From the IMG/VR virus record IMGVR_UViG_3300042502_001233, positions 1-64,000 of that record: a stretch of 64,000 bases of DNA; one strand, 5' to 3'. Under the pieces are notes generated by a model, which was given only the letters and a program-made list of their open reading frames with translations, made no database searches and was not told the DNA's origin. The stretch's first letter is position 1. Each line of letters opens with the position of its first letter. Positions 6,503-57,145 of this stretch are shown here, one piece after another. The position numbers and the translations under genes are program-made.

Positions 6503-6588
6503 CAGCTACAACGGGAGTCGAACCCGCTACGTGGATAAATCCACACTAGAGTGACAGTCTAGCACACCAACCGTTATGCGCTGTAGCT
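6503..6588 (-). tRNA. tRNA-Asp(GTC) with long variable arm
   Basis: CTAGA-CTGTCAC-TCTAG followed by hairpin GTGGA-TTTA-TCCAC. Confidence 0.85.
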
Positions 6589-6593
6589 ATTTT

Positions 6594-6668
6594 TGGCGGT
6601 CTATGAGGGAATCGAACCCTCATCACAAGCGTGACAAGCTTGCATCCTAGCCGTTGAACGAATAGACC
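6594..6668 (-). tRNA. tRNA-Asp(GTC)
   Basis: cloverleaf with encoded CCA. Confidence 0.93.
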
Positions 6669-6705
6669 ATTTAGATTTTTGATTACTGGAATCTTAACCA
6701 GATTG

Positions 6706-6780
6706 TAGCCCTGACGGGATTCGAACCCGCATTGCGCACCTTGAAAGGGTGGCTTCCTATTCCGTTTAGAAGACGGGGCC
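6706..6780 (-). tRNA. tRNA-Glu(TTC)
   Basis: cloverleaf, CCACC-CTTTCAA-GGTGC. Confidence 0.9.
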
Positions 6781-6786
6781 ATGTTG

Positions 6787-6859
6787 TGGGGACAGAGGGA
6801 GTCGAACCCTCGACACCTGACTCTTCAGGCCAGTGCTCTACCAACTGAGCTACATCCCC
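6787..6859 (-). tRNA. tRNA-Phe(GAA)
   Basis: canonical cloverleaf. Confidence 0.95.
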
Positions 6860-6869
6860 GATTATGTTG

Positions 6870-6940
6870 TGGAACCAACGGGAGTCGACCCCGTGTCTCT
6901 GCGCCTTCAACGCAGTGCTAAACCCCTCAGCTATGGAACC
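6870..6940 (-). tRNA. atypical tRNA-Phe(GAA)
   Basis: CTGCG-TTGAAGG-CGCAG; two U-U mismatches in acceptor; T-loop GTCGACT. Confidence 0.7.
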
Positions 6941-6960
6941 AATTTTTGCTTAATAAAAAA

Positions 6961-7359
6961 CTACATTTTTAAAACTTGATTATAAATTTCATCAATAGTT
7001 AACCCATTTTTATGTAAATTAACAATAAACTCAATATGTTCTTTAGATGTTAACTTAGGTCTCCTATTTTCTAAATTTTCTTTTCTTGTCACAACCCTTA
7101 GATTTATTAATCTATTATCGTCCTTATCTCGGTTAATATGGTCAACTTCTAAACCATCTAATTTATCAGTAATAAAAACTTCAGCTACTAATCTATAAAC
7201 ACTAAACTGATGTCTTTTTTCATCTATTTTTAATTTTATCCTATGATAACCTTTTTTATTTACAAATGGTTTTAAAATTCTATTCGTTAGAATATTTCTA
7301 ATTCTACCTAAATCTGAAATTTCATAAAATGTTTCTCTAAATTTTTTCCAATTTTCCAT
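6961..7359 (-). CDS. NUMOD4-HNH homing endonuclease
   Basis: ENWK..YEISDLGRIR; VDHINRDKDDNRLINL. Confidence 0.85.
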   Translation of the reverse strand: MENWKKFRETFYEISDLGRIRNILTNRILKPFVNKKGYHRIKLKIDEKRHQFSVYRLVAEVFITDKLDGLEVDHINRDKDDNRLINLRVVTRKENLENRRPKLTSKEHIEFIVNLHKNGLTIDEIYNQVLKM

Positions 7360-7373
7360 TTTAATTTTTTAAT

Positions 7374-7405
7374 AAAAAAAGCCTGACATTTTTACTGTCA
7401 GGCTT
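7374..7405 (-). terminator. attenuator terminator of Phe/Glu/Asp/Ala tRNA operon
   Basis: AAGCCTGACA-GTAAAAA-TGTCAGGCTT followed by U tract. Confidence 0.85.
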
Positions 7406-7430
7406 ATCATTTATATCGTTAATTTAAACG

Positions 7431-7520
7431 TTAACTTATGACAGTGTTTGACCTTCCGTAAGAGTAATCCTCCTCGGCTGCGAAAAATGCAAAATCAAAT
7501 ATGTTAGTTAAAGTTCTCAT
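7431..7520 (-). CDS. attenuator leader peptide MRTLTNIFDFAFFAAEEDYSYGRSNTVIS
   Basis: 29-aa ORF between promoter and terminator; 11 consecutive F/D/A/E codons; 3' ACTGTCA complementary to terminator 5' arm. Confidence 0.8.
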   Translation of the reverse strand: MRTLTNIFDFAFFAAEEDYSYGRSNTVIS

Positions 7521-8668: not shown

Positions 8669-8686
8669 AAAAAACATTTTTTTTCG

Positions 8687-8863: not shown

Positions 8864-8866
8864 TAG

Positions 8867-9904: not shown

Positions 9905-9967
9905 TTGTGTTTTATATTAAAAATAACTCACTTTTGAAAAAAGTAAATATTAACCAGTGATTTATTG

Positions 9968-10053
9968 TAGGGCTAGCTGGACTCGAACCAGCGTTATACT
10001 TCTCGTCTCCATCTTGTAAGGATGGGATGTTTAACCAACTACACCATAGCCCC
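9968..10053 (-). tRNA. tRNA-Val(TAC) with long variable region
   Basis: CCATC-CTTACAA-GATGG plus 16-nt variable region. Confidence 0.85.
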
Positions 10054-10367: not shown

Positions 10368-10388
10368 CGCTTCCTTCTTTATCATTAG

Positions 10389-10459
10389 AGGCGCCGACTG
10401 GATTCGAACCAGTGTACGGGGATTTGCAGTCCCCTGCCTAGCCACTCGGCCACAGCGCC
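10389..10459 (-). tRNA. tRNA-Cys(GCA)
   Basis: canonical, U73. Confidence 0.95.
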
Positions 10460-18299: not shown

Positions 18300-18509
18300 T
18301 TACCAACTATCGTAGTCGGTTATATCTTTTTTAACTTCAAACAATCCTTTTTCTTTGCTTTTTATAATAACTTCAATGTTATCACCAATACCAGTTGGTG
18401 TAAAGCAAAACGTTCTTGTGTAATATGTCTCATGACCGTATAATGTTTTAACAGCGTCTTCAACTTCTTTTAAGTTTTGTTTTTCTTTTTCGTTTAAACT
18501 AAAATCCAT
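18300..18509 (-). CDS. hypothetical protein
   Basis: MDFSLNEKE...DITDYDSW. Confidence 0.6.
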   Translation of the reverse strand: MDFSLNEKEKQNLKEVEDAVKTLYGHETYYTRTFCFTPTGIGDNIEVIIKSKEKGLFEVKKDITDYDSW

Positions 18510-20444: not shown

Positions 20445-21521
20445 TTATGACAACCCAACTTTTTCGTTTAATCTTTGGGAGAAAAACTTTTTAGAAATTT
20501 CAGAAACATATTTACCAATATCCTTTATTTCTAACCCTTCATCGCTAATAGTTTGAAGCTCTTCTTTTACTATGTCATTCATAACTGATTTTATATATTT
20601 ACCAGTATCTTTAACATCGAAAGTACCACCATTTAACGTGTCAAATGTTTCATTAAGCATTTGTTCAAGTCTCCAAGCTGGGGTGATTTTTTCAGCTAAG
20701 TCTATGCATTTTTGTACCCTCGCATCATCAACTGGTTTGAGTGTTTTAACTTTTGAAACACCAGCGTGTTTCTCACCTTTAGATTTGAAAAAGATTCTAA
20801 CACCATTTTCATCTAAATTTGAAAAAACAATCCCTTCACCTACAGTATTTGGAAAACCAAAGTGTTTAGCCACTGGACATTCGTCTTCAACACTTAAAGT
20901 CATTTCAATCATTTTGTTTTGACTAAGTTCAGGTCTATTAAAATCAATTTCAATTTCATATGTTTGAAAATCTAACATATTGTAAATTCTTTTTTCGTTA
21001 TCCCTGAAACCTGAATAATCGACCCAATAAGCTGGGTTGTTTTTTAATTCTTCTTCATTTTCTACGATAGGTGAAATCTTTATACCATAGATAAACACCG
21101 ATTTTTCAATATTGGTAATACCAACACCTTTTTGAATATTAGAACCAGCCCACTCTGAATAAACACCAATTGTGTTATTATCCAAATCGATACCGTATTT
21201 ATCAGCTATTTCGTTGATGATTCTCAACCAAGATTCTTTTGTTGATTCTGCAAAAAAAGCAAAACCAGCATTGTCGGATTGAGGGGTGATGATATTACCT
21301 CTACTCTGACACCACATACCTGATTTGTTATTAAACAAAACACCAGCTGAAGTACCGTGTAGTTTAACAGTACCAATAAATTTAATAATTGGTTTTGGTT
21401 TAGATGGGTCGTAAATAGGCTCACCATTTTCATCTAAACCACAGAAGTTATGTTTTCTGTTTACATCACTAACAACCTCTCTAAATTGAGGGGTTGATGG
21501 GTATTTTACCATTTTTTTCAT
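20445..21521 (-). CDS. RNA ligase, Rnl2 family
   Basis: KLHGT motif I, GEGIV, FKSK. Confidence 0.8.
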   Translation of the reverse strand: MKKMVKYPSTPQFREVVSDVNRKHNFCGLDENGEPIYDPSKPKPIIKFIGTVKLHGTSAGVLFNNKSGMWCQSRGNIITPQSDNAGFAFFAESTKESWLRIINEIADKYGIDLDNNTIGVYSEWAGSNIQKGVGITNIEKSVFIYGIKISPIVENEEELKNNPAYWVDYSGFRDNEKRIYNMLDFQTYEIEIDFNRPELSQNKMIEMTLSVEDECPVAKHFGFPNTVGEGIVFSNLDENGVRIFFKSKGEKHAGVSKVKTLKPVDDARVQKCIDLAEKITPAWRLEQMLNETFDTLNGGTFDVKDTGKYIKSVMNDIVKEELQTISDEGLEIKDIGKYVSEISKKFFSQRLNEKVGLS

Positions 21522-31313: not shown

Positions 31314-32252
31314 TTAGGACCCCTTTTTTATTTCAGTTACTATACCTTTAATAGCAAAGTTTTTTATTTTTTGCCATTTGGTGATGTTGTTTGACATCAC
31401 TGGTTTACCACCATCTGGATTTATTGCAATCGTAATGTGTGGTATTGCATTGGCTGATGGATAACCTTCTACTTTGACCGCCATGGCCATATCGCTAAGA
31501 CCTATGGCTTCAACATACAACGTTACCTCTTTACCTAAGTCTTCTTTGTTTGGAACACCTTTACCGAATACAATTGTCATGTGGTGAGCAAATACTTTCC
31601 AACCTTCTGGGATATAATCATCAAGTCTAGATAACAACGCTGCTTTAGAACCATTATCCAATACAACAGCTGAATATAACACATCAGATTCTTTGTACAT
31701 GTCTTTAGACTCCAAAACACTTTTCAATGTTAGCAATCCTTGACCTTTGTGAGATTCAATCAATGATTGAATTTTTTCCAATGGTACACCGTGAGTATTT
31801 CTCTCAGCAAGTATTTCCGCTGGTAACCCGTTGGTACCTATATCAACAAATTTTATGTTGTTATCAGACAAACCTAATTCTAACGCTGCTTTCACATACG
31901 CTTTGGATTCGTTTTGTTTGATGTTCGTGTTATCCACAATAACTGGTGATAATCCTTCTTTCAAAGATTTTATCGCATTTTTCAAGTTTGTTGAGTGCGC
32001 TCTTGACAATGGTGTGAAATCTTTCGACTCAAACATTGCTGCAAAGAATTTGTTGTAATCACCTTGTGACTCAATAACATCGTCTGTGGAGTGTATGATA
32101 CCTTCACCTACTAGTTCTTTAGCTTTTGTGGATTTACCAGAACCTGGTATACCGCGCATAACTATCAGTTCTTGTGTTGGTCTTGTAACTACAACACCCA
32201 ACGCATTTTTTTTCATGTCTTCTCTTAATATTGTTCTTATTTCTTTTTTCAT
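31314..32252 (-). CDS. polynucleotide kinase-like P-loop + 2H cyclic phosphodiesterase (RNA end healing)
   Basis: GIPGSGKS, VDNTN, RNTHGVP; HHMT and HIT motifs. Confidence 0.8.
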   Translation of the reverse strand: MKKEIRTILREDMKKNALGVVVTRPTQELIVMRGIPGSGKSTKAKELVGEGIIHSTDDVIESQGDYNKFFAAMFESKDFTPLSRAHSTNLKNAIKSLKEGLSPVIVDNTNIKQNESKAYVKAALELGLSDNNIKFVDIGTNGLPAEILAERNTHGVPLEKIQSLIESHKGQGLLTLKSVLESKDMYKESDVLYSAVVLDNGSKAALLSRLDDYIPEGWKVFAHHMTIVFGKGVPNKEDLGKEVTLYVEAIGLSDMAMAVKVEGYPSANAIPHITIAINPDGGKPVMSNNITKWQKIKNFAIKGIVTEIKKGS

Positions 32253-34922: not shown

Positions 34923-34940
34923 AGTTATTATTTAATGTTG

Positions 34941-35014: not shown

Positions 35015-35021
35015 AATTTTT

Positions 35022-35098: not shown

Positions 35099-35104
35099 AG
35101 TATT

Positions 35105-35177
35105 TGGTACCGAGTATGGGAGTCGAACCCATGTATTCATCTTTATGAGGGATGAACGTTTTCCTATAACCCTCGGC
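35105..35177 (-). tRNA. atypical tRNA with CAT anticodon (Met/Ile2)
   Basis: short D arm, extended anticodon stem TTCATC/GATGAA, CCA. Confidence 0.65.
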
Positions 35178-35183
35178 ATTTTG

Positions 35184-35257
35184 CGGCCTCGACAGGATTC
35201 GAACCTGTAACCCTTGAGTTAACAACTCACCGCTCTAACCATTATAGCTACGAGGCC
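35184..35257 (-). tRNA. tRNA-Asn(GTT)
   Basis: cloverleaf, G73. Confidence 0.9.
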
Positions 35258-35264
35258 TTTTTTT

Positions 35265-35340
35265 TGGCGGCCTAGGTAGGATTCGAACCTACACGCCTCA
35301 CCTTAACAGGGTGCCGCTCTACCGTTGGAGCTACTAGGCC
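35265..35340 (-). tRNA. tRNA-Asn(GTT)
   Basis: cloverleaf, CCA. Confidence 0.92.
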
Positions 35341-35763: not shown

Positions 35764-35765
35764 AG

Positions 35766-35849
35766 TTGTGACGGTGGGGCTCGAACCCACATTGTGTTAT
35801 AAACACCCAGCGTATCAGGCTGGTGACTAAACCATTCATCCACATCACA
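35766..35849 (-). tRNA. tRNA-Ile(GAT) with long variable arm
   Basis: CCAGC-CTGATAC-GCTGG + GTGTT-TAT-AACAC hairpin. Confidence 0.8.
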
Positions 35850-35856
35850 GTTTTCG

Positions 35857-35930
35857 TGGGTAACACGGGAGTCGAACCCATAACCTCTCGCGTATCAGGC
35901 GAGTGCTCTAACCAGTTGAGCTAGCTACCC
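35857..35930 (-). tRNA. tRNA-Ile(GAT)
   Basis: canonical. Confidence 0.93.
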
Positions 35931-36113: not shown

Positions 36114-36120
36114 AATTTAG

Positions 36121-36207
36121 GGTGAAAAGACGGGACTCGAACCCGCAAGGACATTTCTGTCATCTGGCTCACAACCAGACTCGCTACCGTTACGTACTAC
36201 AATCACC
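36121..36207 (-). tRNA. tRNA-His(GTG) with long variable arm
   Basis: TCTGG-TTGTGAG-CCAGA + GACA-GAAA-TGTC; imperfect acceptor. Confidence 0.75.
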
Positions 36208-36216
36208 ATGTATTTC

Positions 36217-36849
36217 TTATACTCGACCTAATCTCCAATTATCTGGAATTAAATCATCTTTTTTAATCTTTTTATTTTCACTACCATTTGTTACCCATCG
36301 ACTACCAAATTGTGAATTTGTTTCACCAACACCAGTACCTTTTTTTACTTTAGACATTAATTGTTTAGATTCATGACTATGGGTTTCACCTTCCCAATTT
36401 TTAATCCAATTTTTATCTCTAGTACCAGTTAAATATTCTAGTGTTCTAGCTGTTGATATTTTATTACTTTTCTTTTCTACCCATTCTGGGTCTTGTCTTA
36501 AAAGCTTTTGTTTTTCGTTTGATTTAATCGCATTCAATTTTTGTTGTTCCGAGCTAAACCCACCAGTACCACCTTCTCTAAGATTCATACACATAGGGTT
36601 TTCCACCAACTCTTTAGTAACAATTTCAATCTCTCTAAGAACCATTTCTTCTCTTGTAGGTAAAAATTCAAGTATTTCTTTTGTATGGTTTTCCACACCA
36701 TGTTTTCTAATTGAATACCTAAGTCTTTTACCACTCCCCATATAACCATCTTCCAGGTTATATGCACTATGCATTCCTACATAATATCTTCCCGTTACAT
36801 TACATGTTGTTTTATATATGTAATGTATGTTTCTTTGTTTTCTTGCCAT
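36217..36849 (-). CDS. GIY-YIG (Seg-like) homing endonuclease
   Basis: YIYKTT..YYVGMH..DGYMGSG; paralog of 57153..57812. Confidence 0.88.
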   Translation of the reverse strand: MARKQRNIHYIYKTTCNVTGRYYVGMHSAYNLEDGYMGSGKRLRYSIRKHGVENHTKEILEFLPTREEMVLREIEIVTKELVENPMCMNLREGGTGGFSSEQQKLNAIKSNEKQKLLRQDPEWVEKKSNKISTARTLEYLTGTRDKNWIKNWEGETHSHESKQLMSKVKKGTGVGETNSQFGSRWVTNGSENKKIKKDDLIPDNWRLGRV

Positions 36850-36908
36850 TTCTCTTTCTTTCTAAATAAATATCTTAAGAAAGAGAAAAGTACAAAAAAG
36901 TTTAAGAG

Positions 36909-36983
36909 GGTGGTATATCGGGTTCGAACCGATGACCCTCGACACCACAAGCCGATGCTCTAACCAACTGAGCTAATACCACC
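36909..36983 (-). tRNA. tRNA-His(GTG)
   Basis: canonical, G-1:C73. Confidence 0.93.
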
Positions 36984-39607: not shown

Positions 39608-40801
39608 TCAAGATAATCCTAATAATTTTTTAAATTTATCAGTTTCCATTTTTTGAATGGCTTTTCCAAGTTCAGGTCCAGGACCTATATTGAATTTTTC
39701 CATCGCTTCTGGACCAGTAACTGTTAGTCTGAACTCTTCAAAAGCATCTAGCAATTGTGATGATATACCTTCGTTGCTACCAAAATTTCTAATTTGGTCG
39801 TTGGATACTCCAGAAGTTTGTTGTACTTTCTTTAATAAGTAAGCAGTGTCAACATCTAACTTCAATAATGAAATTAAAAACACAATGGCTTTAATCTCAT
39901 CCGATGAGTATTTTAAATCATTTAGTTTTTTTCTCAATACATCAACGTTGTTACCTTTTAACAACCTAGCTAACAATACTATGTAATCATCAGCTTTGTA
40001 ATCAGAGTTTCTTCTAAATACTCTTGTGTCTACATCCAAATTAGGAAATATCCAATCAAACAATTTGTATTTGTCTAACATCAACAAGTAAGCGTCGGTT
40101 GATTTAGCTGATATAAGCCCTTTGATAAATTCATCTCTAATACGTTCACCAGAAATACCTTCAAGACTAGCATCTTGTTGTAACGCAGCATCTACGTCAG
40201 GGTCCAACCCACTACCAAATCTACCAGCCAGTCTTATACCTCTAAGTTTACGTAATTTATCTTCACTAAACCTGTCTTCTGATTTACCAACAGTGCGTAT
40301 AACAGAATTTTTTAAATCAACGATACCACCTACTAAATCTACTACTTCTTGGGTGTCCATATCATAAAACAAAGCATTTACACTAAAATCTCTTCTTAAA
40401 ACATCAGATTTTATATCTGAAAATTCAACGTAATCTGGTCGTCTACCATCACTACTACCGATATCTTTACGCATAGTAGCTATCTCATATTCACCATCTG
40501 TAGTTATAACATTAACCACACCAAACGCTTTACCTGTTTCCAATATATTTGTAACAAATTCTTGATTTTTTAATAAATTTATTACGTTATCTGGTGTGGC
40601 ATTTGTTACTAAATCAAAATCTTTTGGTGTTACATTAAGTAACATATCACGAACTGACCCACCAATAGGGTATAATTCAAAACCATTTTTTTTAAAAATT
40701 GAATGAATTTTATTAACATTTGTCGGAAATTTAAAATAAATTTTTAATCTCTTCTCTGATGTTAAATTTTTTTTTAAAATTTCCTTTATAATTGTTTTCA
40801 T
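39608..40801 (-). CDS. cca: CCA-adding tRNA nucleotidyltransferase (class II)
   Basis: GGSVRD..DFD, EIAT.R, RRDFSVNA, EDKLR.LR; most tRNAs here lack an encoded CCA. Confidence 0.88.
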   Translation of the reverse strand: MKTIIKEILKKNLTSEKRLKIYFKFPTNVNKIHSIFKKNGFELYPIGGSVRDMLLNVTPKDFDLVTNATPDNVINLLKNQEFVTNILETGKAFGVVNVITTDGEYEIATMRKDIGSSDGRRPDYVEFSDIKSDVLRRDFSVNALFYDMDTQEVVDLVGGIVDLKNSVIRTVGKSEDRFSEDKLRKLRGIRLAGRFGSGLDPDVDAALQQDASLEGISGERIRDEFIKGLISAKSTDAYLLMLDKYKLFDWIFPNLDVDTRVFRRNSDYKADDYIVLLARLLKGNNVDVLRKKLNDLKYSSDEIKAIVFLISLLKLDVDTAYLLKKVQQTSGVSNDQIRNFGSNEGISSQLLDAFEEFRLTVTGPEAMEKFNIGPGPELGKAIQKMETDKFKKLLGLS

Positions 40802-43586: not shown

Positions 43587-43608
43587 AGTTTCTATTATTT
43601 AAAGTTTG

Positions 43609-43683
43609 AGGTCGGAGAGAGATTTGAACTCCCACCGTAAAGGTTCTTGCGGAACCAGTGCCTTACCATTCGACCATCCGACC
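43609..43683 (-). tRNA. atypical tRNA-Cys(GCA)-like
   Basis: GGTCGGA/TCCGACC, U73, GGTT-CCGCAAG-AACC. Confidence 0.6.
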
Positions 43684-44290: not shown

Positions 44291-44350
44291 AATTTCTAAT
44301 TTTTTGTTTATTATAAATATACCACACTTTTAAAAAATGTAAAGTGTTTG

Positions 44351-44423
44351 TAGTTCTAATCGGACTCGAACCGATATCTCTCCGTTTTAGAGGCGGGTGT
44401 ATTCACGTTAATACTATAGAACC
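44351..44423 (-). tRNA. amber suppressor tRNA (anticodon CTA)
   Basis: GGTTCTA/TAGAACT acceptor, loop CT-CTA-AA, canonical T arm; weak anticodon stem. Confidence 0.8.
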
Positions 44424-45305: not shown

Positions 45306-48300
45306 TTACATTTTAAATGCTGTAACATAAATAAATTTATCACTTTCTCTTAAAACCAAGTTATCAAAACCTATTTCTAAAAGTATTCTTTTAAATTCAT
45401 CTTCATTATCTTTCCATTGATTGGCTGTTTCTGCAATCATGATTGGTTGCATAGTTCTCAATACTCTGTAAGCTTCTTTTAAATAATCTTCATAATTGCT
45501 ACCCATAAGTGATAAACTAAAAACAACAACATCTATAGATTCATCGTCTAAAGGTAATTTTGAAATATCACAAGCTATTACTGAATCATCAATGGCTACG
45601 TGGTCAAATGATAACACTTTGTTGGGTATTTCAGTTTTTAAAAGGTTTTCACCACATCCAAAATCACCAACAATATAATCTTTACGTTTAATTTGTTTAG
45701 CGATTTCTTTATATGGTATTTCTGACCAAGTTTTTCTAGCTTCACGATACAAAGTATGATACTGATACCACTCAGTTGGGTCCTCGGTTAATCGTTTGTT
45801 AGTTGTAATAGAATTTGATACACCCCAGCGTTTATTCATTTGACTGAACTCACCATATTTAGGTAGGTTATGATTAACATAATTTGGATTCAAAGGTATT
45901 TTAAATTCTTCTCTATCAAACGTGATAATCTCACCGTTGTTTAAACGATTAACCCATTCGGCCAACTCTTGTTGTGCTTCAAACACTAATCGTTCTCTTG
46001 AAGGTAGGAGATTTCTAGGAACACGCCCATCAATTGCTAAATCACCCAAAGTTGCTTTAAATCTAATTATATTATGTCTACGTCTGTCCCAACTCCAAAT
46101 ATGTTCGCCAGCTGGTATAATAACTTGTGGAATATAAATGTTAACTTTATCAAATTTAGAACCTTGTCTATTAACACGACCAACTAATTGGTCATATTCA
46201 GAACTGGTCCATGGAAGTACTATTGGTATCAATGTGTCACACACATATTGAATACCGTCTACACCAGTACCAACTGGTGCCGAACCAATTAAAACATCTA
46301 ATTTACCCTTTTTAAAAGCTTCTAAACCACTTTTATCGTCACCAGTATAAAATCCTATACTAAAACCTAAATCTTTTACGAATTTACCTATAATATCGGT
46401 TAATTCAGTAACATAATATGTGTATATTAAAGTCCCCCTTTTTATTTTATCTTTAACAGAATCAAGTTTAGTATTAATTAAAACTTTTTCGAACTCGCTA
46501 ACAGCACCTTTAGGTATTGCTATGATTTCATTAAACAAATGACTACCATCAGATTCTATGATTTCTTCGTTAACTGAAATACCATAATTAGGTTTATAAC
46601 GAAGACCATATCTTGTTAATGCTTTATACATTTCAATACCATTTACAATGTTTTCTTTGGTTTCTAATTCGTTATGAGATTCACCTGTTAACAATTCAAT
46701 TAATTTTTTAGGTTCTGTTAAATTGTTAATAATTGGTGTTGCCGACATAGCCATAACTAATAAATTTTCATTATCTTCTTTAGAGTTTATTATTAGTTTT
46801 TTAACAACATTCCTTCTAATAGATTCTTCGTTATCACGCTGCTTAACATTTTGAACTTCATCTAAAATTATGTAATCAATCTGATTATATTTTAACAATT
46901 CAGAAACAATATATTCACCATCTTCTAACTGAAACGTTTCATAATTTAATACTAAATAATTATAAACATTTTCTTTTAATTTTATGTTATGTTTATGAAC
47001 TAAATTATAATTAGAATTAACACCTTCTAATTCTTTCTTAACGTAAATCTGATTGTTAGTGAAATATTCATTTATGGACTCAACCCAGCCCTCAACAGTT
47101 GCATTATTACAAATTATTATAGTGTTTTTAGCACCAGCTAACCTACCAGCAAATATTGCAGATAAAGTTTTACCAGCACCAGTTCCAGACCAGTTACCGT
47201 ATTTTTTCTCTTTAATTAAACGATAACTAATTAGTTTTTGCATTAAGTTTGGCTGATGTTGAAAAATGTAATCACTTGGGGCGACTATTTTACAAACTTC
47301 TTCGTATTCACTAAAAAACCAGTCTTTAATTATTGTAAACCTTTCACCACCAGTTTCACCTCTTAAAGTATCAACATCTATTTGATTGTTAAGAACTTTA
47401 TTCCACAATTTTTTTAATTGATTCTTTAACAAGAAATCAATATTTTCATCATCCAAAGAAGCGGTAACCATTGTATTATCATACATATGTAATTCTTTAA
47501 TTGGGTCTAAAGGTGCTAATGACTCTGGTTCTTCTTCAGTAATTTCATCAACATTACCCTCAACTAAATCAACTTCTAAATTAGTTGGTTCGTTTAGAAT
47601 AGAATCATTGTTGGTGTCATCGTCAGACTCATCGTTTTCTAACGTATCTAATATATCGTGAATTAATCTTTCTCTTTCCTCCGAACCAGCTTCAGAAGAA
47701 GTTAAAGAATCTAATGACCCTATTTGTTGTATTTTTTTAGCGAGATTGTTTGAATTTATTATGGTTATTAGTTCAACTGAGTCCATATAAATTAAATCTT
47801 TTTCTAAAGATTTAATAAAGTCTAACATATAACGTTTATTCCAATAGTGACCATCACCTAAAGAACCTAACCAATCACCCATAGAAACCCACCCAGAATA
47901 TTTGTATGTTTTTTCTGGCATTGCTGGGATGTTGTCTGGTTTTTTTATGTTTTTCCATTCACTATAAGATTTAAGACCTAAAGTTCTAGCATATTCTCTA
48001 GCTTCTTCAAATGGTAAAAACTCCCTAAAATTTGATAACTTACCATGACCTAACCAATCACTCCAAGATACCCAACCAGATTCTTTATAAACTTGAGATG
48101 GTGATGCTGGAATTTCATCTGGTTTAGCTGAAGATTTAGAAAACAACCTCCATTCTTTTTCACCAGTTAATTTTAAACTTCTAGCATATTCTCTAGCTTC
48201 TTCAAATGGTAGATAATCTCTTTTGTTACATGATATGTAATTAGTTCCTAACCAATCACCCAGCGACACCCAACCAGAATCTTTATAAACCCTATCTGGG

Positions 48301-49202
48301 GCACTAGGTATATTATTTGGTCTTAATTCAGATTTAATAAATTCAACCCATTCCTTTTGTCGGGTTATATTTAATTTTCTAACATATTCTCTAGCCTCTT
48401 CAAACTGTAAAAATTTTTTATCAAAATTTGATAACTTACCGTGACCTAACCAATCAACCCAAGATACCCAACCAGAATCTTTATATGTTTTATTTGGTGA
48501 TTTAGGAATTTTAACATCATAATCGGTAGATTTTAAATATGTTCTAAACTCATTAGTGTTATTTAATTTTAAATTATGTATTATTTTCCTAGCTTCTTTA
48601 AAATCATAAAACTCATCAAAATCTTTTTTATAACCTAAAAAATCACCCCAAGATTTCCACCCATAATTTTTATACATTACGTGAGGTGAATAAGGTAAAC
48701 CATTCACATTTGTTTTGTTTAAATATTCATGATATTTAGTTTGTGATGTTAAACCTAAAATTTTAACTACGTTTTTGGCCTCTTCAAAGGATAAATAATT
48801 TCTATTTTTTAAAGCAACGTAATTAGTTCCTAACCAATCACCCAGCGACACCCAACCAGAATCTTTATATATTTTATCTGGCGATGTAGGTATGTTGTGA
48901 GGCCTTAATTCAGACTTATAAAAATTTTTCCAATCTTGTTGTGTTTTTAATCCTAAACTCTTAACAAAATTTTTAGCAATTTCAAAAGGTAGGTAACCGT
49001 CTTTTAGATTCACCGATGAACATTTAGTTTTATTTAACAAAGCATATGGTGTTATTAAATGTTCTGTATTAAACTTTTTATCAATAACCACCACTTTTTG
49101 GTTAGTATTGACATATTCGACTTTGGAATAATCATAATTATCGTTCCAATTACCACTATCTCTTAATTTTTGTAAAAACTCTTTTGTTTTATCAGTCATC
49201 AT
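45306..49202 (-). CDS. repeat-containing SF2 helicase fused to SAM methyltransferase
   Basis: 6 repeats PFEEAR...GWVSWGDWLG; GTGAGKT, DEVQ, SAT; DFGCGE, FSLSLMG. Confidence 0.8.
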   Translation of the reverse strand: MMTDKTKEFLQKLRDSGNWNDNYDYSKVEYVNTNQKVVVIDKKFNTEHLITPYALLNKTKCSSVNLKDGYLPFEIAKNFVKSLGLKTQQDWKNFYKSELRPHNIPTSPDKIYKDSGWVSLGDWLGTNYVALKNRNYLSFEEAKNVVKILGLTSQTKYHEYLNKTNVNGLPYSPHVMYKNYGWKSWGDFLGYKKDFDEFYDFKEARKIIHNLKLNNTNEFRTYLKSTDYDVKIPKSPNKTYKDSGWVSWVDWLGHGKLSNFDKKFLQFEEAREYVRKLNITRQKEWVEFIKSELRPNNIPSAPDRVYKDSGWVSLGDWLGTNYISCNKRDYLPFEEAREYARSLKLTGEKEWRLFSKSSAKPDEIPASPSQVYKESGWVSWSDWLGHGKLSNFREFLPFEEAREYARTLGLKSYSEWKNIKKPDNIPAMPEKTYKYSGWVSMGDWLGSLGDGHYWNKRYMLDFIKSLEKDLIYMDSVELITIINSNNLAKKIQQIGSLDSLTSSEAGSEERERLIHDILDTLENDESDDDTNNDSILNEPTNLEVDLVEGNVDEITEEEPESLAPLDPIKELHMYDNTMVTASLDDENIDFLLKNQLKKLWNKVLNNQIDVDTLRGETGGERFTIIKDWFFSEYEEVCKIVAPSDYIFQHQPNLMQKLISYRLIKEKKYGNWSGTGAGKTLSAIFAGRLAGAKNTIIICNNATVEGWVESINEYFTNNQIYVKKELEGVNSNYNLVHKHNIKLKENVYNYLVLNYETFQLEDGEYIVSELLKYNQIDYIILDEVQNVKQRDNEESIRRNVVKKLIINSKEDNENLLVMAMSATPIINNLTEPKKLIELLTGESHNELETKENIVNGIEMYKALTRYGLRYKPNYGISVNEEIIESDGSHLFNEIIAIPKGAVSEFEKVLINTKLDSVKDKIKRGTLIYTYYVTELTDIIGKFVKDLGFSIGFYTGDDKSGLEAFKKGKLDVLIGSAPVGTGVDGIQYVCDTLIPIVLPWTSSEYDQLVGRVNRQGSKFDKVNIYIPQVIIPAGEHIWSWDRRRHNIIRFKATLGDLAIDGRVPRNLLPSRERLVFEAQQELAEWVNRLNNGEIITFDREEFKIPLNPNYVNHNLPKYGEFSQMNKRWGVSNSITTNKRLTEDPTEWYQYHTLYREARKTWSEIPYKEIAKQIKRKDYIVGDFGCGENLLKTEIPNKVLSFDHVAIDDSVIACDISKLPLDDESIDVVVFSLSLMGSNYEDYLKEAYRVLRTMQPIMIAETANQWKDNEDEFKRILLEIGFDNLVLRESDKFIYVTAFKM

Positions 49203-54347: not shown

Positions 54348-54420
54348 AAATCGCACTGGTACGACTTTTTTCTAATTTCTAGATATTTATAGATATAACA
54401 ATTATCTAACACAAAATATC

Positions 54421-54588
54421 ATGGGAAGAAAAGCAAAACTACAAGAAGAGAAAAAAGGTAAACTATCAATCACCATCTCATCCGATAACTATGAAATACT
54501 AGTTAATGAAAACATCAATAAATCTAAATTAATCGATTGGTTATTAGAACAACATTTTAACTCTTTAAACAATGGGAAGGGTGCTTAA
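54421..54588 (+). CDS. small RHH-like protein
   Basis: MGRKAKLQEEKK...NKSKLIDWLLEQHF. Confidence 0.7.
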   Translation: MGRKAKLQEEKKGKLSITISSDNYEILVNENINKSKLIDWLLEQHFNSLNNGKGA

Positions 54589-55195
54589 TGATGAACAGAA
54601 AAAAGCTAGAGCTGAATACCAAAAAGCTTGGCGAGAAGCTAATAAAGAACGTTTAGCTGAATGGCATAGAGAATATAGAAAGAATAACCCAGAAAAGAAC
54701 AAAACCAACACTAAAGCGTATAGAGAGCGTCACCCAGAAAAAGCAAAAGAATCAACTAAAAAATATAAAGCGAATAATCAAGACAAAATTAAAGCTGCAT
54801 CAATAGTGTATAGAGGTAGAAAACTTGAATTACATAATATCAAAAAAGCTAATGACCCAGTGTATAATTTAAAATGTACTGTTAGAAGCGGTATATTAAA
54901 ATCTTTCTCCAGAATCAACGCTAAGAAAAACAATAAAACAGTTGAAATTCTAGGATGTTCTTATGAGTTTTTAAAAGAACATATTGAATCAAAATTTGAA
55001 CCATGGATGACTTGGGGCAACAAAGGTCTTTATAATGGTGAATTAAACTACGGTTGGGATGTAGACCACATCATACCACTGGATACAGCGGTGACCGAAG
55101 AAGATGTGATTAGACTTAACCATTATACCAACCTACAACCACTTTGTAGTAAAATCAATCGAGATATTAAAAAAAATAACCCTAGTTACTACTAG
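54572..55195 (+). CDS. HNH homing endonuclease
   Basis: WDVDHIIP...HYTNLQPLC; close paralog of 49644..50309. Confidence 0.85.
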   Translation: MGRVLNDEQKKARAEYQKAWREANKERLAEWHREYRKNNPEKNKTNTKAYRERHPEKAKESTKKYKANNQDKIKAASIVYRGRKLELHNIKKANDPVYNLKCTVRSGILKSFSRINAKKNNKTVEILGCSYEFLKEHIESKFEPWMTWGNKGLYNGELNYGWDVDHIIPLDTAVTEEDVIRLNHYTNLQPLCSKINRDIKKNNPSYY

Positions 55196-55207
55196 GGTTA
55201 TTTATTA

Positions 55208-55891
55208 TTATGAAAGAAGCTCTATTTTACCTCTTAATATGTCTTTTAGACTAGCAGTCTTATTAGTGATATGGTCTACAACCATATCATCCTTTACACG
55301 ATAAGTCCTTCTTTTATCGGCACGACCACCTTCACCAATTTGTTCATTACGGTTTTCAATGGTTAATGAATCATGACCTGTTTTATAAAAGTTATTAACC
55401 CTTTGAGTTAATTCAGCAATCGCTGCTTCTTTATTTTGGTGTTGACTTCGACTATCACGTCTAACTTTAATCCCAGTTGCTATATGAGTTACAACAACAC
55501 ATGATTCAGTTTTATTCCTTTTTTGCCCACCGTTCCCAGTTCCTCTGGTTGTTTCCAAACGATATTCACTAGGATGTAATTCTACTTCCTTATAATCGTT
55601 TTCTTCCATAAGTGCTACGGTGATTGAACTTGTATGAACCCTACCTTTTCTTTCGGTTGGTGGTACTCTTTGCCACCTATGTGAACCTACATGGTTTAAG
55701 AACACATTTTTAACATTATATCCAGATATTCAGATAGTTATCATACCATCTTTCTCATCAATAACTTTAGCTTCAAATGAATAATTTTTGCAAGCTTTTA
55801 AAAAAATATCTCGCATATCTTTAATTAATAATTTTGAATCATCACCGCCTTCTGACGCTCTTAATTCTAATAAAATTTTATTTGTTTTCAT
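55208..55891 (-). CDS. class I peptide chain release factor-like protein (no domain 1) with in-frame TGA at codon 54
   Basis: LELRASEGG..., HRWQRVPPTERKGRVHTS, GGQ; frame continuous across TGA 55730-55732. Confidence 0.85.
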
Positions 55892-56669
55892 TGTATTTTG
55901 GTCTATTTAAATTGCCTTCATATATAACACCGTTTATTTCCCTTGTTGTTCCCCACATTGGTCTAAGATTCGATAAAGCGTTTACCACACTGGCTGGAGT
56001 TTCTGGTGGAAAACTAATAATTTGTTTTATATGGTCTATGTGCCATTCTCCATAATTATCCCATGTCATTCCGTCAGTAAATAAGTTTGTGATATGTTCT
56101 TTAAATTCTAAAGCTGAATAGCCTAACATATCTATGGTCTTACCAGTTTTTTTGTTATGTAAATCACGTAGCGAATTTTTTAATATTCGCCTCCAAGCTA
56201 TTACGTGTGGGTTTTTTTGATTATATAATTTAGCGTTTTCTTTTATTTTTTCTTTATTATTTTTTCTATATTCTTTACCGTAAGCTGATTTTTTTTCACG
56301 ATTATCTATTAAATATTGTTTGTCATACGCTTTTTTCTTTTCTTTATTTAACGCAACGTATTCTTTATTTTTTTGTTTAACATATTCAATATTTTCTTTA
56401 CGATATTCTTTTTGATAATTATTTCGTTTATCTTTATTTTCCAAACGGTGGTTAATAAAATACTCATTTAACTTTTCTTTATTCTTTTCCCTATACTTTG
56501 CATCGAGTAACTTCTTTTTTTGTAAAGAAACATCACTATGGATTTTCACATCAGGATATAACTCCCTTAACTGTTTAACCGTTAAATTGTGTGATTTTAA
56601 ATGTTTGGTCGATAATGAAGATAAATCTTTTCCACATACTGGACAAGTTACAAATGAAGATGGTTCCAT
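55878..56669 (-). CDS. HNH homing endonuclease
   Basis: CPVC..HL..H, K/E repeats, WHIDHI...NLRPMW..N. Confidence 0.85.
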   Translation of the reverse strand: MEPSSFVTCPVCGKDLSSLSTKHLKSHNLTVKQLRELYPDVKIHSDVSLQKKKLLDAKYREKNKEKLNEYFINHRLENKDKRNNYQKEYRKENIEYVKQKNKEYVALNKEKKKAYDKQYLIDNREKKSAYGKEYRKNNKEKIKENAKLYNQKNPHVIAWRRILKNSLRDLHNKKTGKTIDMLGYSALEFKEHITNLFTDGMTWDNYGEWHIDHIKQIISFPPETPASVVNALSNLRPMWGTTREINGVIYEGNLNRPKYNENK

Positions 56670-56731
56670 AATATTCTTTTATAATAAATATCACAAATAA
56701 TTAAAAAAACCACAAATGGCAAAGAATTCCA

Positions 56732-56926
56732 TTCGTTCTTAAAGATTTCTTTTGCGTTTTTACCCGTTAGTCAGATGCTAACAAATCCTAACCTATCTTC
56801 GGTTATTATTCAGTCGATGTTATTGTTCTTCGCTGTTTTAATGTAAATGTCGCGCATTTCACAAACCAACAGCTTCGCATCGGTTCCACCTTCTGCGTCT
56901 CGGATTTCTAAATTAATTTTTCCCAT
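56732..56926 (-). pseudogene. orphaned original 5' part of release factor gene (two in-frame TGA)
   Basis: MGKINLEIRDAEGGTDAK...ID*II...FVSI*LTGKNAKEIFKNE. Confidence 0.85.
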
Positions 56927-56962
56927 TGGTTTTGTTTTTTGTTGTTTGTTATTAGTTTTAAT

Positions 56963-56989
56963 AAAAAACCCCATATTGCTATGGGGTTT
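56963..56989 (-). terminator. intrinsic terminator
   Basis: CCCCAT-AGCAAT-ATGGGG-TTTTTT. Confidence 0.75.
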
Positions 56990-56998
56990 AGTATTTTA

Positions 56999-57053
56999 CA
57001 GAATAGTTTTTGTTTTTTTTTCCTTAAAAATTTCAATTGCTGAATCTATTCTT
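56999..57053 (-). ncRNA. TTCAGCAA-stem RNA, copy 2
   Basis: AGAATAG-ATTCAGCAA...CTATTCTG. Confidence 0.45.
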
Positions 57054-57057
57054 CTAG

Positions 57058-57145
57058 TTGCGGAAGTAGGACTCGAACCTACAACACAGTGTTACTGCTC
57101 CTCTAGGTTATGAGCCTAGCATGTTTCCATTTCCACCATTCCGCG
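57058..57145 (-). tRNA. tRNA-Met(CAT), initiator-like C1:A72, long variable arm
   Basis: CTAGG-CTCATAA-CCTAG + 20-nt variable arm. Confidence 0.8.

What the first reader, a model, noticed from the sequence alone, without database searches (positions are those of the whole stretch)
6503..57145. Class I tRNAs with long variable arms, usually paired with a canonical isoacceptor
Asp(GTC) 6503, Val(TAC) 9968, Ile(GAT) 35766, His(GTG) 36121 and Met(CAT) 57058 carry 16-20 nt variable regions, normally restricted to Leu/Ser/Tyr/Sec. Asp, Ile, His and Met each have a normal twin immediately upstream; Phe, Glu, Arg and Asn are also doubled. Inference: structurally altered back-ups that evade host tRNA nucleases, decoys, or tRNAs with swapped identity.
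Basis: partly seen in the sequence, partly recalled or inferred. Interest (0 to 1): 0.68.

Follow-up and report, generated by a model that had tools for sequence, protein, structure and literature searches.

The report
Extra-armed tRNAs of huge phages
A 362-kb lake-water phage carries tRNAs for Asp, Val, Ile, His and initiator Met with an extra hairpin arm that textbooks reserve for Leu/Ser/Tyr, and these are conserved tRNA families shared by many huge phages, not broken copies.

Summary
ARAGORN finds all five long-variable-arm tRNAs at the stated places, and Rfam finds four of them. The window is the first 64 kb of a complete 362-kb IMG/VR phage with 45 tRNAs.

The five are not pseudogenes. 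Each belongs to a family present in other huge-phage contigs:
- Ile: 9 distinct sequences.
- Val: 22, including the published 735-kb phage.
- Met: 10.
- His: 6.
- Asp: 2.

Compensatory base changes occur in the stems, including the extra arm. Identity marks fit the anticodon: G73 for Asp, A73 for Val and Ile, G-1/C73 for His, and a 1:72 mismatch with G2-C71/C3-G70/A73 for initiator Met. Swapped identity is therefore unlikely.

The arm is a 3-5 bp hairpin, often with a GNRA or UUCG loop, inserted in the variable loop. It leaves at least 3 unpaired bases on its 3' side, unlike Ser (1) or Leu (2). Short-loop relatives exist for His, Met and Asp.

In neighbouring arrays, 51 of 330 class-I tRNAs of isotypes I did not search for are also long. 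Two bait patterns found no such tRNA in prokaryote genomes outside MAG contigs dense with tRNA genes.

Paralogous GIY-YIG homing endonucleases sit between the His and Met twins. What the arm is for, and whether these tRNAs are expressed, remain untested. I found no prior description.

The parts
6502..6588 (-). tRNA-Asp(GTC) with an 18-nt variable region forming a 5-6 bp hairpin, G73 and C38 (Asp-v)
   Evidence: ARAGORN. Rfam 43.5 bits. MFE five-arm cloverleaf. Homologue L065:1112-1197 has compensatory changes in the acceptor, anticodon and V stems.
6594..6668 (-). Canonical tRNA-Asp(GTC) twin, 5 nt upstream of Asp-v, with CCA encoded
   Evidence: ARAGORN. Rfam 59.2 bits. Its sequence is unrelated to Asp-v beyond the tRNA consensus.
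9967..10053 (-). tRNA-Val(TAC) with a 16-nt variable region (motif AGACGAGAAGTATAAC). It is the only Val-TAC tRNA of the genome (Val-v).
   Evidence: ARAGORN. Rfam 55.5 bits. The family has 22 distinct sequences; all acceptor and anticodon-stem pairs covary, and the 15:48 Levitt pair covaries. Also present in LR756501.
35765..35849 (-). tRNA-Ile(GAT) with a 16-nt variable region forming a 4-bp hairpin, and A73 (Ile-v)
   Evidence: ARAGORN. Rfam 50.2 bits. Nine distinct homologues, with 12 of 24 pairs changed on both sides, including 3 of 4 V-stem pairs. RNAalifold predicts the V stem independently.
35856..35930 (-). Canonical tRNA-Ile(GAT) twin, 6 nt upstream of Ile-v
   Evidence: ARAGORN. Rfam 67 bits.
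36120..36207 (-). tRNA-His(GTG) variant (His-v). G-1 is at 36207 and the discriminator is C73. The V arm is a 4-bp stem with a GAAA loop. The acceptor stem has U-U mismatches plus one extra U.
   Evidence: ARAGORN, with the register corrected by alignment. Not reported by Rfam. Homologues in L065, L024, L034, L013 and L031 have covarying V stems. A relative's copy lies on a wastewater RNA-library contig.
36217..36849 (-). GIY-YIG-type homing endonuclease ORF (210 aa) inserted between the canonical His tRNA and His-v
   Evidence: Weak SegE_GIY-YIG Pfam match. Paralogue of 57153-57812 at 51% identity, E 1e-72. A related contig joins the two His tRNAs with 3 nt and lacks this ORF (joint 36211/36907).
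36908..36983 (-). Canonical tRNA-His(GTG) twin, including encoded G-1 at 36983
   Evidence: ARAGORN. The base immediately upstream is g. Rfam 63.1 bits.
57057..57145 (-). Initiator-type tRNA-Met(CAT) with a 20-nt variable region. It has a C1-A72 mismatch, G2-C71, C3-G70, G4-C69 and A73 (Met-v).
   Evidence: ARAGORN. Rfam 53.2 bits. In a family of 10 distinct sequences, position 1:72 is always mismatched and the stems covary.
57153..57812 (-). GIY-YIG-type homing endonuclease ORF (219 aa) inserted between the canonical initiator tRNA and Met-v
   Evidence: In L067, L069 and L071 the two Met genes are 6 nt apart, with no ORF between them.
57870..57943 (-). Canonical initiator tRNA-Met(CAT) twin, with C1-A72 and A11-U24
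   Evidence: ARAGORN. Rfam 63.5 bits. Sequence.
39608..40801 (-). Context: phage CCA-adding enzyme. Most of the tRNA genes, including all five variants, lack an encoded CCA.
   Evidence: Pfam PolyA_pol head domain, 6.7e-35. 3' ends of the tRNA genes.
31314..32252 (-). Context: polynucleotide kinase / cyclic phosphodiesterase-like tRNA healing enzyme
   Evidence: Pfam AAA_33 and tRNA_lig_CPD.
20445..21521 (-). Context: RNA ligase (tRNA sealing)
   Evidence: Pfam RNA_ligase, 6e-09.

Best explanation
The five genes are working tRNAs of phage-specific lineages. Each is an ordinary 7/5 cloverleaf for the amino acid its anticodon names. A short, stable hairpin has been inserted into its variable loop on the 5' side, leaving three or more loop nucleotides, including the Levitt partner 48.

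Shown here:
- The families are conserved across many huge phages.
- The stems, including the extra arm, evolve by compensatory change.
- Identity nucleotides match the anticodon.
- Short-loop relatives of the same lineages exist.
- The arm geometry differs from that of Ser and Leu tRNAs.

Inferred:
- The genes are transcribed within the tRNA arrays and receive CCA from the phage enzyme.
- Host synthetases charge them with the cognate amino acid, since the genome encodes no synthetase of the relevant families.
- They decode normally, and the Met variant is formylated and initiates.
- The arm escapes SerRS and LeuRS because of its short stem and its three or more unpaired 3' bases.

Most likely purpose of the arm (inference only): it alters the core and variable-loop face of the tRNA. 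Host tRNA-directed enzymes (defence nucleases or transferases, turnover enzymes, some modification enzymes) would then handle these tRNAs differently from host-like ones. That would give the phage a second, insulated supply beside its canonical copies.

The genes also move between phages in tRNA cassettes that carry homing endonucleases.
For: Structure and conservation:
- Ile-v: 9 distinct sequences, 99% of cells paired, 12 of 24 pairs with double changes, V stem 3 of 4. RNAalifold predicts the same arm.
- Val-v: 22 distinct sequences plus a Gln relative. All 7 acceptor pairs and all 5 anticodon-stem pairs covary. G15 goes with C48 in 3 sequences and A15 with U48 in 20, with no exception.
- Met-v: 10 sequences with covarying stems.
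- His-v: the V stem appears as GACA/TGTC, GAAC/GTTC, GGGA/TTCC, CCTT/AAGG and GTGA/TCAC.
- Asp-v: three double changes against L065.

Identity:
- A73 is invariant in Ile-v and Val-v.
- G-1 is present in 6 of 6 His-v and C73 in 5 of 6.
- G73 and C38 are present in both Asp-v sequences.
- In Met-v, 1:72 is a non-Watson-Crick pair in 9 of 9 alignable sequences. G2-C71, C3-G70 and G4-C69 are kept, A73 is present in 8 of those 9, and some members have GGG/CCC in the anticodon stem.

Insertion model:
- L030 is the His lineage with a 5-nt loop TCCTT, which matches the 3' end of the long region.
- L004 is a short-loop relative of Met-v.
- L068 is a short-loop Asp tRNA with the same AGCT acceptor stem.

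Geometry: unpaired bases 3' of the arm number 1 in Ser (27 of 44), 2 in Leu (30 of 32), and 3 or more in the variants (Ile 12 of 12). Loops are often GAAA, GCAA, GTAA or UUCG.

Not just back-ups: Val-v is the only Val-TAC tRNA in this genome. The variants stand alone in L013, L022, L065 and L070.

Breadth: 51 of 330 class-I tRNAs of isotypes not used as search bait are 80 nt or longer in the fetched phage loci.

Phage specificity: the Ile-v pattern has 0 hits in 185,579 species genomes. The Val/Gln motif occurs in tRNAs only on MAG contigs dense with tRNA genes.

Charging: no synthetase of PF00133, PF00587 or PF00152 in the genome.

Context and mobility: tRNA repair enzymes and a CCA-adding enzyme lie in the window. 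The endonucleases between the His and Met twins are paralogues, and those sites are empty in relatives. Met-v differs by 1 nt from the L003 copy, while the neighbouring CCA enzyme is only 69% identical.
Against: - No expression, processing or aminoacylation data. The RNA-library contigs that touch the region cannot show transcription.
- The window's His-v has an extra U in the acceptor stem and falls below Rfam's threshold, so it may be impaired.
- The anticodon loops of twin and variant are nearly the same, so the known route of escape from anticodon nucleases (loop mutations) does not apply.
- A long arm is a positive determinant for SerRS, and apparently for MenT3- and AbiEii-type toxins. 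It could therefore be a liability rather than a shield.
- The arms differ in sequence between families, which argues against one common protein partner.
- The families were found with sequence patterns, which inflates apparent conservation of the baited segments: the Ile D-arm, the Val V motif, and the Met V loop.
- Ile-v, Val-v and Met-v carry A73 and mostly A15-U48, two E. coli leucine determinants.
Confidence: 0.6

Rival explanations
1. The arm itself has no adaptive role. The variable loop is the one place where a tRNA tolerates insertions. Huge phages carry redundant tRNA sets, so hairpin insertions get fixed. They may help by breaking a homing-endonuclease target in the tRNA gene, or they may hitchhike in endonuclease-driven cassettes. 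Afterwards they are kept as compact hairpins only so that they do no harm. The tRNAs still work as cognate tRNAs.
For: - Endonuclease ORFs pervade the arrays.
- Paralogous GIY-YIG genes sit exactly between canonical and long-arm twins, at sites that are empty in relatives.
- The variants are patchily distributed among close relatives. G001 has Ile-v but not Asp-v, Val-v or His-v.
- Near-identical variants occur in phages whose proteins are only about 70% identical.
- The arms differ between families.
- The converse also occurs: Leu tRNAs with short loops.
Against: - Redundant tRNA genes are common in bacteria, yet long-arm class-I tRNAs were not found there with two family patterns.
- The arms arose in at least 14 isotypes and persist over deep divergence.
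- In the Val/Gln family the D-arm and arm motif are invariant while every other stem covaries. That looks like constraint on the arm itself.
- Asp-v and Ile-v have no adjacent endonuclease.
Confidence: 0.25
2. The tRNAs have swapped or dual identity. The long arm, or A73 together with A15-U48, lets SerRS or LeuRS charge them. Ile, Val, Met, Asp or His codons would then be partly read as Ser or Leu.
For: - Bacterial SerRS reads the arm and not the anticodon. E. coli LeuRS reads A73, A15-U48 and G18G19 and not the anticodon (review text).
- Ile-v, Met-v and most Val-v have A73 and A15-U48.
- Allo-tRNAs set a precedent.
Against: - Discriminators and other identity marks follow the anticodon in every family (G73 Asp, G-1/C73 His, initiator marks for Met) rather than a uniform Ser or Leu set.
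- The arm has 3 or more unpaired 3' bases and a 3-5 bp stem, against 1 unpaired base and 5-7 bp in the same phages' Ser tRNAs.
- The variants lack A20a.
- In some phages the variant is the only tRNA for that anticodon, so mischarging there would recode the proteome.
Confidence: 0.06
3. The tRNAs are decoys or have a non-translational use. They could act as sponges for host toxins that recognise long-arm tRNAs (MenT3 or AbiEii type), or as donors or handles for a phage enzyme, rather than as decoders.
For: - Some abortive-infection and TA nucleotidyltransferases prefer class-II tRNAs.
- The invariant D-arm plus arm motif of the Val/Gln family looks like a binding module.
Against: - A decoy has no need of a strictly conserved anticodon, discriminator, G-1, a 1:72 mismatch, or Levitt-pair covariation.
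- Fourteen or more isotypes are involved.
- No AbiEii, PIN, Schlafen or PrrC-type gene is present in the phage itself. That only shows the phage does not supply the toxin.
Confidence: 0.07
4. The genes are decaying pseudogenes or software artefacts.
For: - His-v fails Rfam's threshold and has a flawed acceptor stem.
- The Met-v MFE fold is not a cloverleaf.
Against: Conservation with compensatory changes in all five families, and presence in several independent lake metagenomes.
Confidence: 0.02

Closest known systems
Class II (type 2) tRNAs: bacterial Leu, Ser, Tyr and Sec
   Same: Five-arm cloverleaf with a stem-loop in the variable region. Some variants (Ile-v, Met-v, His-v) also have a 3-bp D stem. 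The ribosome and EF-Tu are known to accept this shape.
   Different: The amino acids are Asp, Val, Ile, His and fMet, and in relatives also Thr, Asn, Cys, Lys, Gln, Pro, Gly, Trp and Glu. The arm is shorter than in Ser tRNAs and has 3 or more unpaired 3' bases, closest to the bacterial Tyr geometry. The lineages have short-loop relatives, so the arm is a secondary insertion and not inherited from Leu, Ser or Tyr tRNAs.
allo-tRNAs and related irregular tRNAs (Mukai et al. 2017, PMC5389517)
   Same: [quoted passage not shown] Some occur in phages and in tRNA polycistrons.
   Different: Allo-tRNAs have an 8/4 or 9/3 acceptor/T architecture, a long D stem, G73 or U73, and a predicted serine identity. 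Many are inactive or linked to toxin-antitoxin loci. The tRNAs here are 7/5, and their identity nucleotides match the anticodon.
selC* tRNA-Cys and (8/4) tRNA-His of phages (same paper)
   Same: Cys or His tRNAs with non-standard structure. The selC* Cys tRNAs have a long arm. Some of these tRNAs are phage-encoded.
   Different: They are 8/4, and the (8/4) His tRNAs lack G-1 and have A73. His-v here is 7/5, with G-1 and mostly C73.
Phage tRNAs that bypass tRNA-targeting defences (T5 tRNAs against PARIS, retron Eco7 and PrrC-like nucleases; PMC10264068, PMC11464382, PMC11555353)
   Same: Phage-encoded isoacceptors that duplicate host functions, in genomes that also carry tRNA repair enzymes.
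   Different: Known escape works through anticodon-loop or stem changes, or through overexpression. Here the anticodon loops of twin and variant are nearly identical, and the difference lies in the variable region. No defence system has been tested.
T4 SegB and the T4 tRNA gene region (from memory, not re-read here)
   Same: A GIY-YIG homing endonuclease embedded in a phage tRNA cluster, favouring inheritance of the neighbouring tRNA genes.
   Different: Here there are two paralogues, each inserted between a canonical tRNA and its long-arm twin. Their targets are unknown.

Membership tests
tRNA (Rfam RF00005, canonical L-shaped adaptor) | Cloverleaf with a 7-bp acceptor stem, 5-bp T stem, GG in the D loop, a TTCRA T loop and a 7-nt anticodon loop | tested here: met
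   ARAGORN cloverleaves. Rfam scores of 43-55 bits for four of the five; His-v is below threshold. Stems are supported by covariation.
tRNA (Rfam RF00005, canonical L-shaped adaptor) | Tertiary Levitt pair 15:48 | tested here: met
   In Val-v, G15 pairs with C48 in 3 sequences and A15 with U48 in 20, with no exception. In Ile-v and Met-v, A15 pairs with U48 (C48 in two Ile-v sequences).
Class II tRNA | Variable region longer than 10 nt that forms a stem-loop | tested here: met
   Variable regions of 16-20 nt. V stems are supported by covariation for Ile, His, Met and Asp. The Val arm is a short conserved hairpin.
Class II tRNA | Amino acid is Leu, Ser, Tyr (bacteria) or Sec | tested here: not met
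   The anticodons are GTC, TAC, GAT, GTG and CAT, and the discriminator and identity marks match them.
allo-tRNA (Mukai 2017) | 8/4 or 9/3 acceptor/T-stem composition | tested here: not met
   7/5 in all five and in their families.
allo-tRNA (Mukai 2017) | Serine identity set (long arm of Ser geometry, G73 or U73) | tested here: not met
   A73 in Ile, Val and Met and C73 in His. Only Asp has G73, which is also the Asp determinant. Three or more unpaired bases lie 3' of the arm, against 1 in Ser tRNAs of the same loci.
Bacterial initiator tRNA (for Met-v) | Mismatch at 1:72 with G2-C71, C3-G70 and A73 (formylation determinants, from established knowledge) | tested here: met
   C-A in the window; C-U, U-C, A-A and U-U in relatives; never a Watson-Crick pair.
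Bacterial initiator tRNA (for Met-v) | Three consecutive G-C pairs 29-31:39-41, and A11-U24 | tested here: inconclusive
   The window's copy has two G-C pairs (like its canonical twin) and U11-A24. L068, L072 and L075 have GGG/CCC.
tRNA-His identity (for His-v) | Genome-encoded G-1 opposite C73 | tested here: met
   G at 36207. G-1 in 6 of 6 family members and C73 in 5 of 6.
Functional, expressed tRNA | Mature transcript with CCA, aminoacylated with the cognate amino acid | not testable with these tools
   Only contigs of RNA libraries were available, and these cannot show transcription.
Nuclease-evading phage tRNA | Resistance to a defined host tRNA nuclease to which the host or canonical isoacceptor is sensitive | not testable with these tools
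The anticodon loops of twin and variant are nearly identical.

The most novel reading that the evidence does not exclude
Huge phages maintain a second tRNA architecture of their own: class-I identities on a five-arm body. The inserted arm would be a functional 'self' feature. It would either block host tRNA-directed immunity or turnover enzymes, or serve as a handle for a phage factor. The Val/Gln module, with its invariant D-arm and GNGAA hairpin, is the best candidate binding site. Under this reading the phage runs a partly insulated translation supply, including its own long-arm initiator tRNA.
Probability: 0.25. Interest if true: 0.85.

Novelty: new variant of a known kind. Interest (0 to 1): 0.72.

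Why it matters
That only Leu, Ser, Tyr and Sec tRNAs carry a long variable arm is one of the most stable rules of tRNA biology, and synthetases and annotation software rely on it. Here it is broken in a conserved way for at least 14 other isotypes, including the initiator, in a widespread group of huge phages.

If the arm is functional, it points to a layer of phage-host conflict or phage-controlled translation that acts on the tRNA core rather than on the anticodon loop.

Either way, these natural sequences show which hairpins class-I tRNAs tolerate, which is useful for tRNA engineering. They also need correct handling in phage annotation, where several score poorly or are mis-registered.

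Tried and rejected
1. **Origin from Leu, Ser or Tyr tRNAs by anticodon mutation.** The Leu-like D-arms of Ile-v and Met-v suggested this. I rejected it as the main origin for three reasons. The same D-arm type occurs in short-loop class-I tRNAs of these phages (L030 His, L002 Ile). Nearest-neighbour scores do not favour class II. Short-loop relatives of the His, Met and Asp lineages exist.

2. **An internal sigma-70 promoter in the Val arm** (CTTACA, 17 nt, TATAAT in many relatives). The window's copy reads TATAAC. The scan shows no promoter excess (26 found against 23.4 expected) and none at Val-v.

3. **Phage-encoded synthetases that might read the arm.** None of PF00133, PF00587 or PF00152 is present.

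4. **A phage-encoded tRNA nuclease or transferase that would make the arm a self-mark.** No PIN, AbiEii, Schlafen or AAA_13/PrrC match.

5. **Close relatives among cultured phages.** None found. Only the uncultured 735-kb genome matched Val-v.

6. **Expression.** RNA-library runs hold only small parts as contigs, so this is inconclusive.

7. **First metagenome scan with the Met-v D-arm pattern.** It found nothing. The second scan, with the arm pattern, found 12 contigs.

8. **Literature.** Eight full-text searches found no description of long-arm class-I tRNAs in phages.

The large protein searches, structure prediction and complex prediction were not used.

Full report
**What the window is.** The window is the first 64 kb of a 362,018-bp IMG/VR virus record that CheckV rates as complete. 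Its G+C content is about 31%. ARAGORN finds 32 tRNA genes in the window and 45 in the genome, all on the minus strand. Rfam adds a tmRNA. The same sequence occurs in lake-water metagenomes: 7 runs from 7 studies hold more than half of the sampled words. INPHARED holds no close relative.

The tRNA arrays are interspersed with homing-endonuclease ORFs of HNH, NUMOD4/HNH_3 and GIY-YIG types. The window also encodes an RNA ligase, a kinase/phosphodiesterase healing enzyme and a CCA-adding enzyme.

**The observation.**
- Asp-GTC 6502-6588
- Val-TAC 9967-10053
- Ile-GAT 35765-35849
- His-GTG 36120-36208
- Met-CAT 57057-57145

They are 85-89 nt long, with variable regions of 16-20 nt. Rfam's tRNA model scores four of them at 43-55 bits, against 59-67 bits for their canonical twins. 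It does not report the His variant. Four of the five fold on their own into a five-arm cloverleaf, and the Met variant at least forms the extra hairpin.

The twins of Asp and Ile lie 5-6 nt upstream. Those of His and Met lie about 700 nt upstream, with an ORF in between. Val has no twin in the whole genome. Phe, Glu, Arg-TCT, Asn and Cys are also duplicated. Beyond the window, the genome has Thr-TGT and Pro-TGG variants with 11- and 20-nt variable regions.

**Are they maintained genes?** I found relatives in two ways: through neighbouring proteins, and through DNA patterns taken from each variant.

- **Ile-v** occurs in 13 viral contigs as 9 distinct sequences. On my cloverleaf, 99% of cells pair and 12 of 24 pairs show changes on both sides. 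Three of the four pairs of the extra arm covary (GTGT/ACAC, GTGC/GCAC, ATTC/GAAT, GTTC/GAAC, GTC/GAC), and the loops include GCAA and UUCG. No shuffle and no slid register comes close. RNAalifold finds the same arm unaided.
- **Val-v** occurs in 30 viral contigs as 22 distinct sequences. It is also in LR756501, the 735-kb genome of Al-Shayeb et al. 2020, which carries a long Thr-TGT as well. Every acceptor and anticodon-stem pair covaries. The tertiary Levitt pair covaries too: G15 with C48 in 3 sequences and A15 with U48 in 20.
- **Met-v** has 10 distinct sequences, taken from viral contigs and 12 metagenome contigs, with covarying stems.
- **His-v** has five homologues whose arm reads GACA/TGTC, GAAC/GTTC, GGGA/TTCC, CCTT/AAGG or GTGA/TCAC, mostly capped by GNRA loops.
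- **Asp-v** has one homologue, with three compensatory double changes.

Decay is therefore excluded. One caveat applies: the segments used as bait (the Ile D-arm, the Val arm motif, the Met arm loop) are conserved by construction.

**What identity do they have?** In every family the nucleotides that synthetases are known to read agree with the anticodon:
- A73 is invariant in Ile-v and Val-v.
- Both Asp-v sequences have G73, C38 and G10.
- His-v has an encoded G-1 in 6 of 6 and C73 in 5 of 6, once the register is corrected. In the window, G-1 is at 36207.
- In Met-v, position 1:72 is C-A, C-U, U-C, A-A or U-U and never a Watson-Crick pair. G2-C71, C3-G70 and G4-C69 are kept and A73 is nearly invariant. 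Several relatives have the GGG/CCC anticodon stem of initiators.

The identity sets themselves come from established knowledge. I re-read those for Leu and Ser in the Giegé and Eriani review.

The genome has no synthetase of the families that serve these amino acids, so host enzymes must charge them.

A uniform Ser or Leu identity, as proposed for allo-tRNAs, does not fit. Ile-v, Val-v and Met-v do carry A73 and A15-U48, two of the E. coli leucine determinants, so some cross-charging cannot be ruled out.

**What the arm is.** Three lineages have members with an ordinary loop. L030 is a His tRNA of the same lineage, and its 5-nt loop TCCTT equals the 3' end of the long region. L004 is a short-loop relative of Met-v. 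L068 is a short-loop Asp tRNA with the same AGCT acceptor stem. The arm is therefore a hairpin inserted into the 5' part of the variable loop of a class-I tRNA. It is not an inheritance from Leu, Ser or Tyr tRNAs.

Across all fetched loci, the number of unpaired bases between the arm and the T stem is 1 in Ser (27 of 44) and 2 in Leu (30 of 32). It is 3 in Tyr, and 3 or more in the class-I variants (Ile 12 of 12). The stems are 3-5 bp, against 5-7 bp in Ser. GAAA, GCAA, GTAA and UUCG loops are common. This keeps positions 46-48 in place and gives a geometry unlike that read by SerRS. That last step is inference.

**How general it is.** The genome and the viral loci together hold 582 distinct tRNAs. 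Of the 490 that are not Leu, Ser, Tyr or Sec, 105 are 80 nt or longer. Among isotypes that I never used as bait, the figure is 51 of 330: Thr 14 of 44, Asn 10 of 33, Cys 8 of 24, plus Lys, Gly, Pro, Trp, Gln and Glu. Arg has 1 of 52, Ala 0 of 20 and Phe 0 of 27. The loci were reached through long-arm tRNAs, so these are not population frequencies.

The Ile-v pattern is absent from 185,579 prokaryotic species genomes. The Val motif occurs in tRNAs there only on five MAG contigs that are dense tRNA arrays, for example 21 tRNAs in 8 kb.

A Gln-TTG tRNA in the closest relative and in two MAG contigs carries the same D-arm and arm motif as Val-v, on a Gln-type acceptor stem. The D-arm/arm module has therefore moved between isotypes.

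The variants are not mere back-ups. In L013, L022, L065 and L070 they are the only Ile-GAT, His, Asp or initiator tRNA in the array.

**Mobility.** The ORFs at 36217-36849 and 57153-57812 are paralogous GIY-YIG endonucleases (51% identity). Each lies exactly between a canonical tRNA and its long-arm twin. A contig from a wastewater RNA library joins His to His-v with 3 nt and lacks the ORF. L067, L069 and L071 have the two Met genes 6 nt apart. So the twins came first and the endonucleases invaded the spacers.

Met-v in L003 differs from the window's copy by 1 nt, although the nearby CCA enzyme is only 69% identical. Ile-v in L015 and L018 also differs by 1 nt. The closest relative, G001, shares Ile-v but not Asp-v, Val-v or His-v. 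This pattern fits cassette exchange between phages, as is known for the SegB region of T4. I cite that precedent from memory.

**Mechanism and rivals.** I conclude that these are functional, cognately charged tRNAs of phage-specific five-arm lineages. I put that part at about 0.8.

The purpose of the arm is unresolved. My preferred reading is that it changes how host tRNA-directed enzymes see the tRNA core, so that the phage has an insulated supply beside its host-like copies. It fits the repair genes and the many duplicated isoacceptors, but nothing here tests it. There are also points against it. Twin and variant share nearly the same anticodon loop. And a long arm is known to attract SerRS and, apparently, MenT3/AbiEii-type toxins.

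The main rival is that the arm is a tolerated insertion, possibly fixed because it breaks an endonuclease target or rides with the cassettes. Identity swap, decoy and pseudogene readings rank lower, for the reasons given under each.

**Novelty.** Eight full-text searches found allo-tRNAs, selC* Cys tRNAs and 8/4 His tRNAs as the nearest precedents. I found no paper that links variable arms with huge or jumbo phages. The huge-phage paper does not mention them. The library is incomplete, so earlier mention elsewhere cannot be excluded.

I file this as a new variant of a known kind: tRNA, with class-II architecture on class-I identities.

Noticed in passing
window 44350-44423 (-); also L001:7731-7803, L003:5678-5749, L005:7400-7471: A tRNA with anticodon CTA (amber suppressor type; ARAGORN labels it 'Pyl') is conserved in relatives. 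ORFs in the window tile well under code 11, so any TAG reading would concern other parts of the genome.
   Followed up: no
window 58850-59227 (-): A phage-encoded tmRNA (Rfam RF00023, 63 bits). Relatives L004, L006 and L008 also have tmRNAs, with different tag peptides.
   Followed up: no
window 5320-5393 (-): A tRNA-like gene for which ARAGORN reports a 4-base anticodon (agac) and an 8-nt anticodon loop. It may be a Val-GAC tRNA with an odd loop, or a frameshift-type tRNA.
   Followed up: no
window 35108-35177 (-): A weak tRNA-like match (Rfam 26.6 bits, not called by ARAGORN) between Arg-ACG and Asn. It has a CAT anticodon-like loop and a degenerate D-arm.
   Followed up: partly
own genome G000:C1:304704-304802 and 360750-360864 (outside the window): Two tRNA-model matches of 99 and 115 nt. 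With introns allowed, ARAGORN reads them as tRNAs with 16- and 44-nt inserts next to the anticodon.
   Followed up: partly
window 1252-1329 (-); L009:14221-14298: A 78-nt tRNA read as Pro-AGG, with a poor D-arm and a 4-bp anticodon stem, is conserved nearly unchanged in the closest relative.
   Followed up: no
L068:134-208, L070:1235-1309, L075:1004-1078, L089 (metagenome and MAG contigs): The converse anomaly: Leu-TAG and Leu-TAA tRNAs of 74-75 nt with a short variable loop, in the same kind of phage tRNA arrays. L070 also has a TTA-anticodon (ochre suppressor type) tRNA of 85 nt.
   Followed up: no
window 18509-19798 (-) and 33067-33999 (-): Two ADP-ribosyltransferase-type genes (PARP catalytic domain 1.9e-24; ART-PolyVal 3.8e-11). 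The second lies directly beside the tRNA array.
   Followed up: no
window 45306-49202 (-): A 1298-aa fusion of an SNF2/DEAD-type helicase with a C-terminal methyltransferase domain (Methyltransf_8, 1.7e-37).
   Followed up: no
window 6423-6940, 34849-35340, 10388-10459 / 43608-43683: The duplicated isoacceptors without long arms (Phe, Glu, Arg-TCT, Cys) also come as one high-scoring canonical copy and one divergent copy, for example Rfam 64 vs 42 bits for Glu and 62 vs 39 for Cys. Asn is the exception (60 vs 60 bits). The genome seems to carry two parallel tRNA sets.
   Followed up: partly
window 61281-62300 (-): A full-length DnaJ homologue (J domain, CXXCXGXG zinc-finger domain and C-terminal domain) encoded by the phage.
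   Followed up: no
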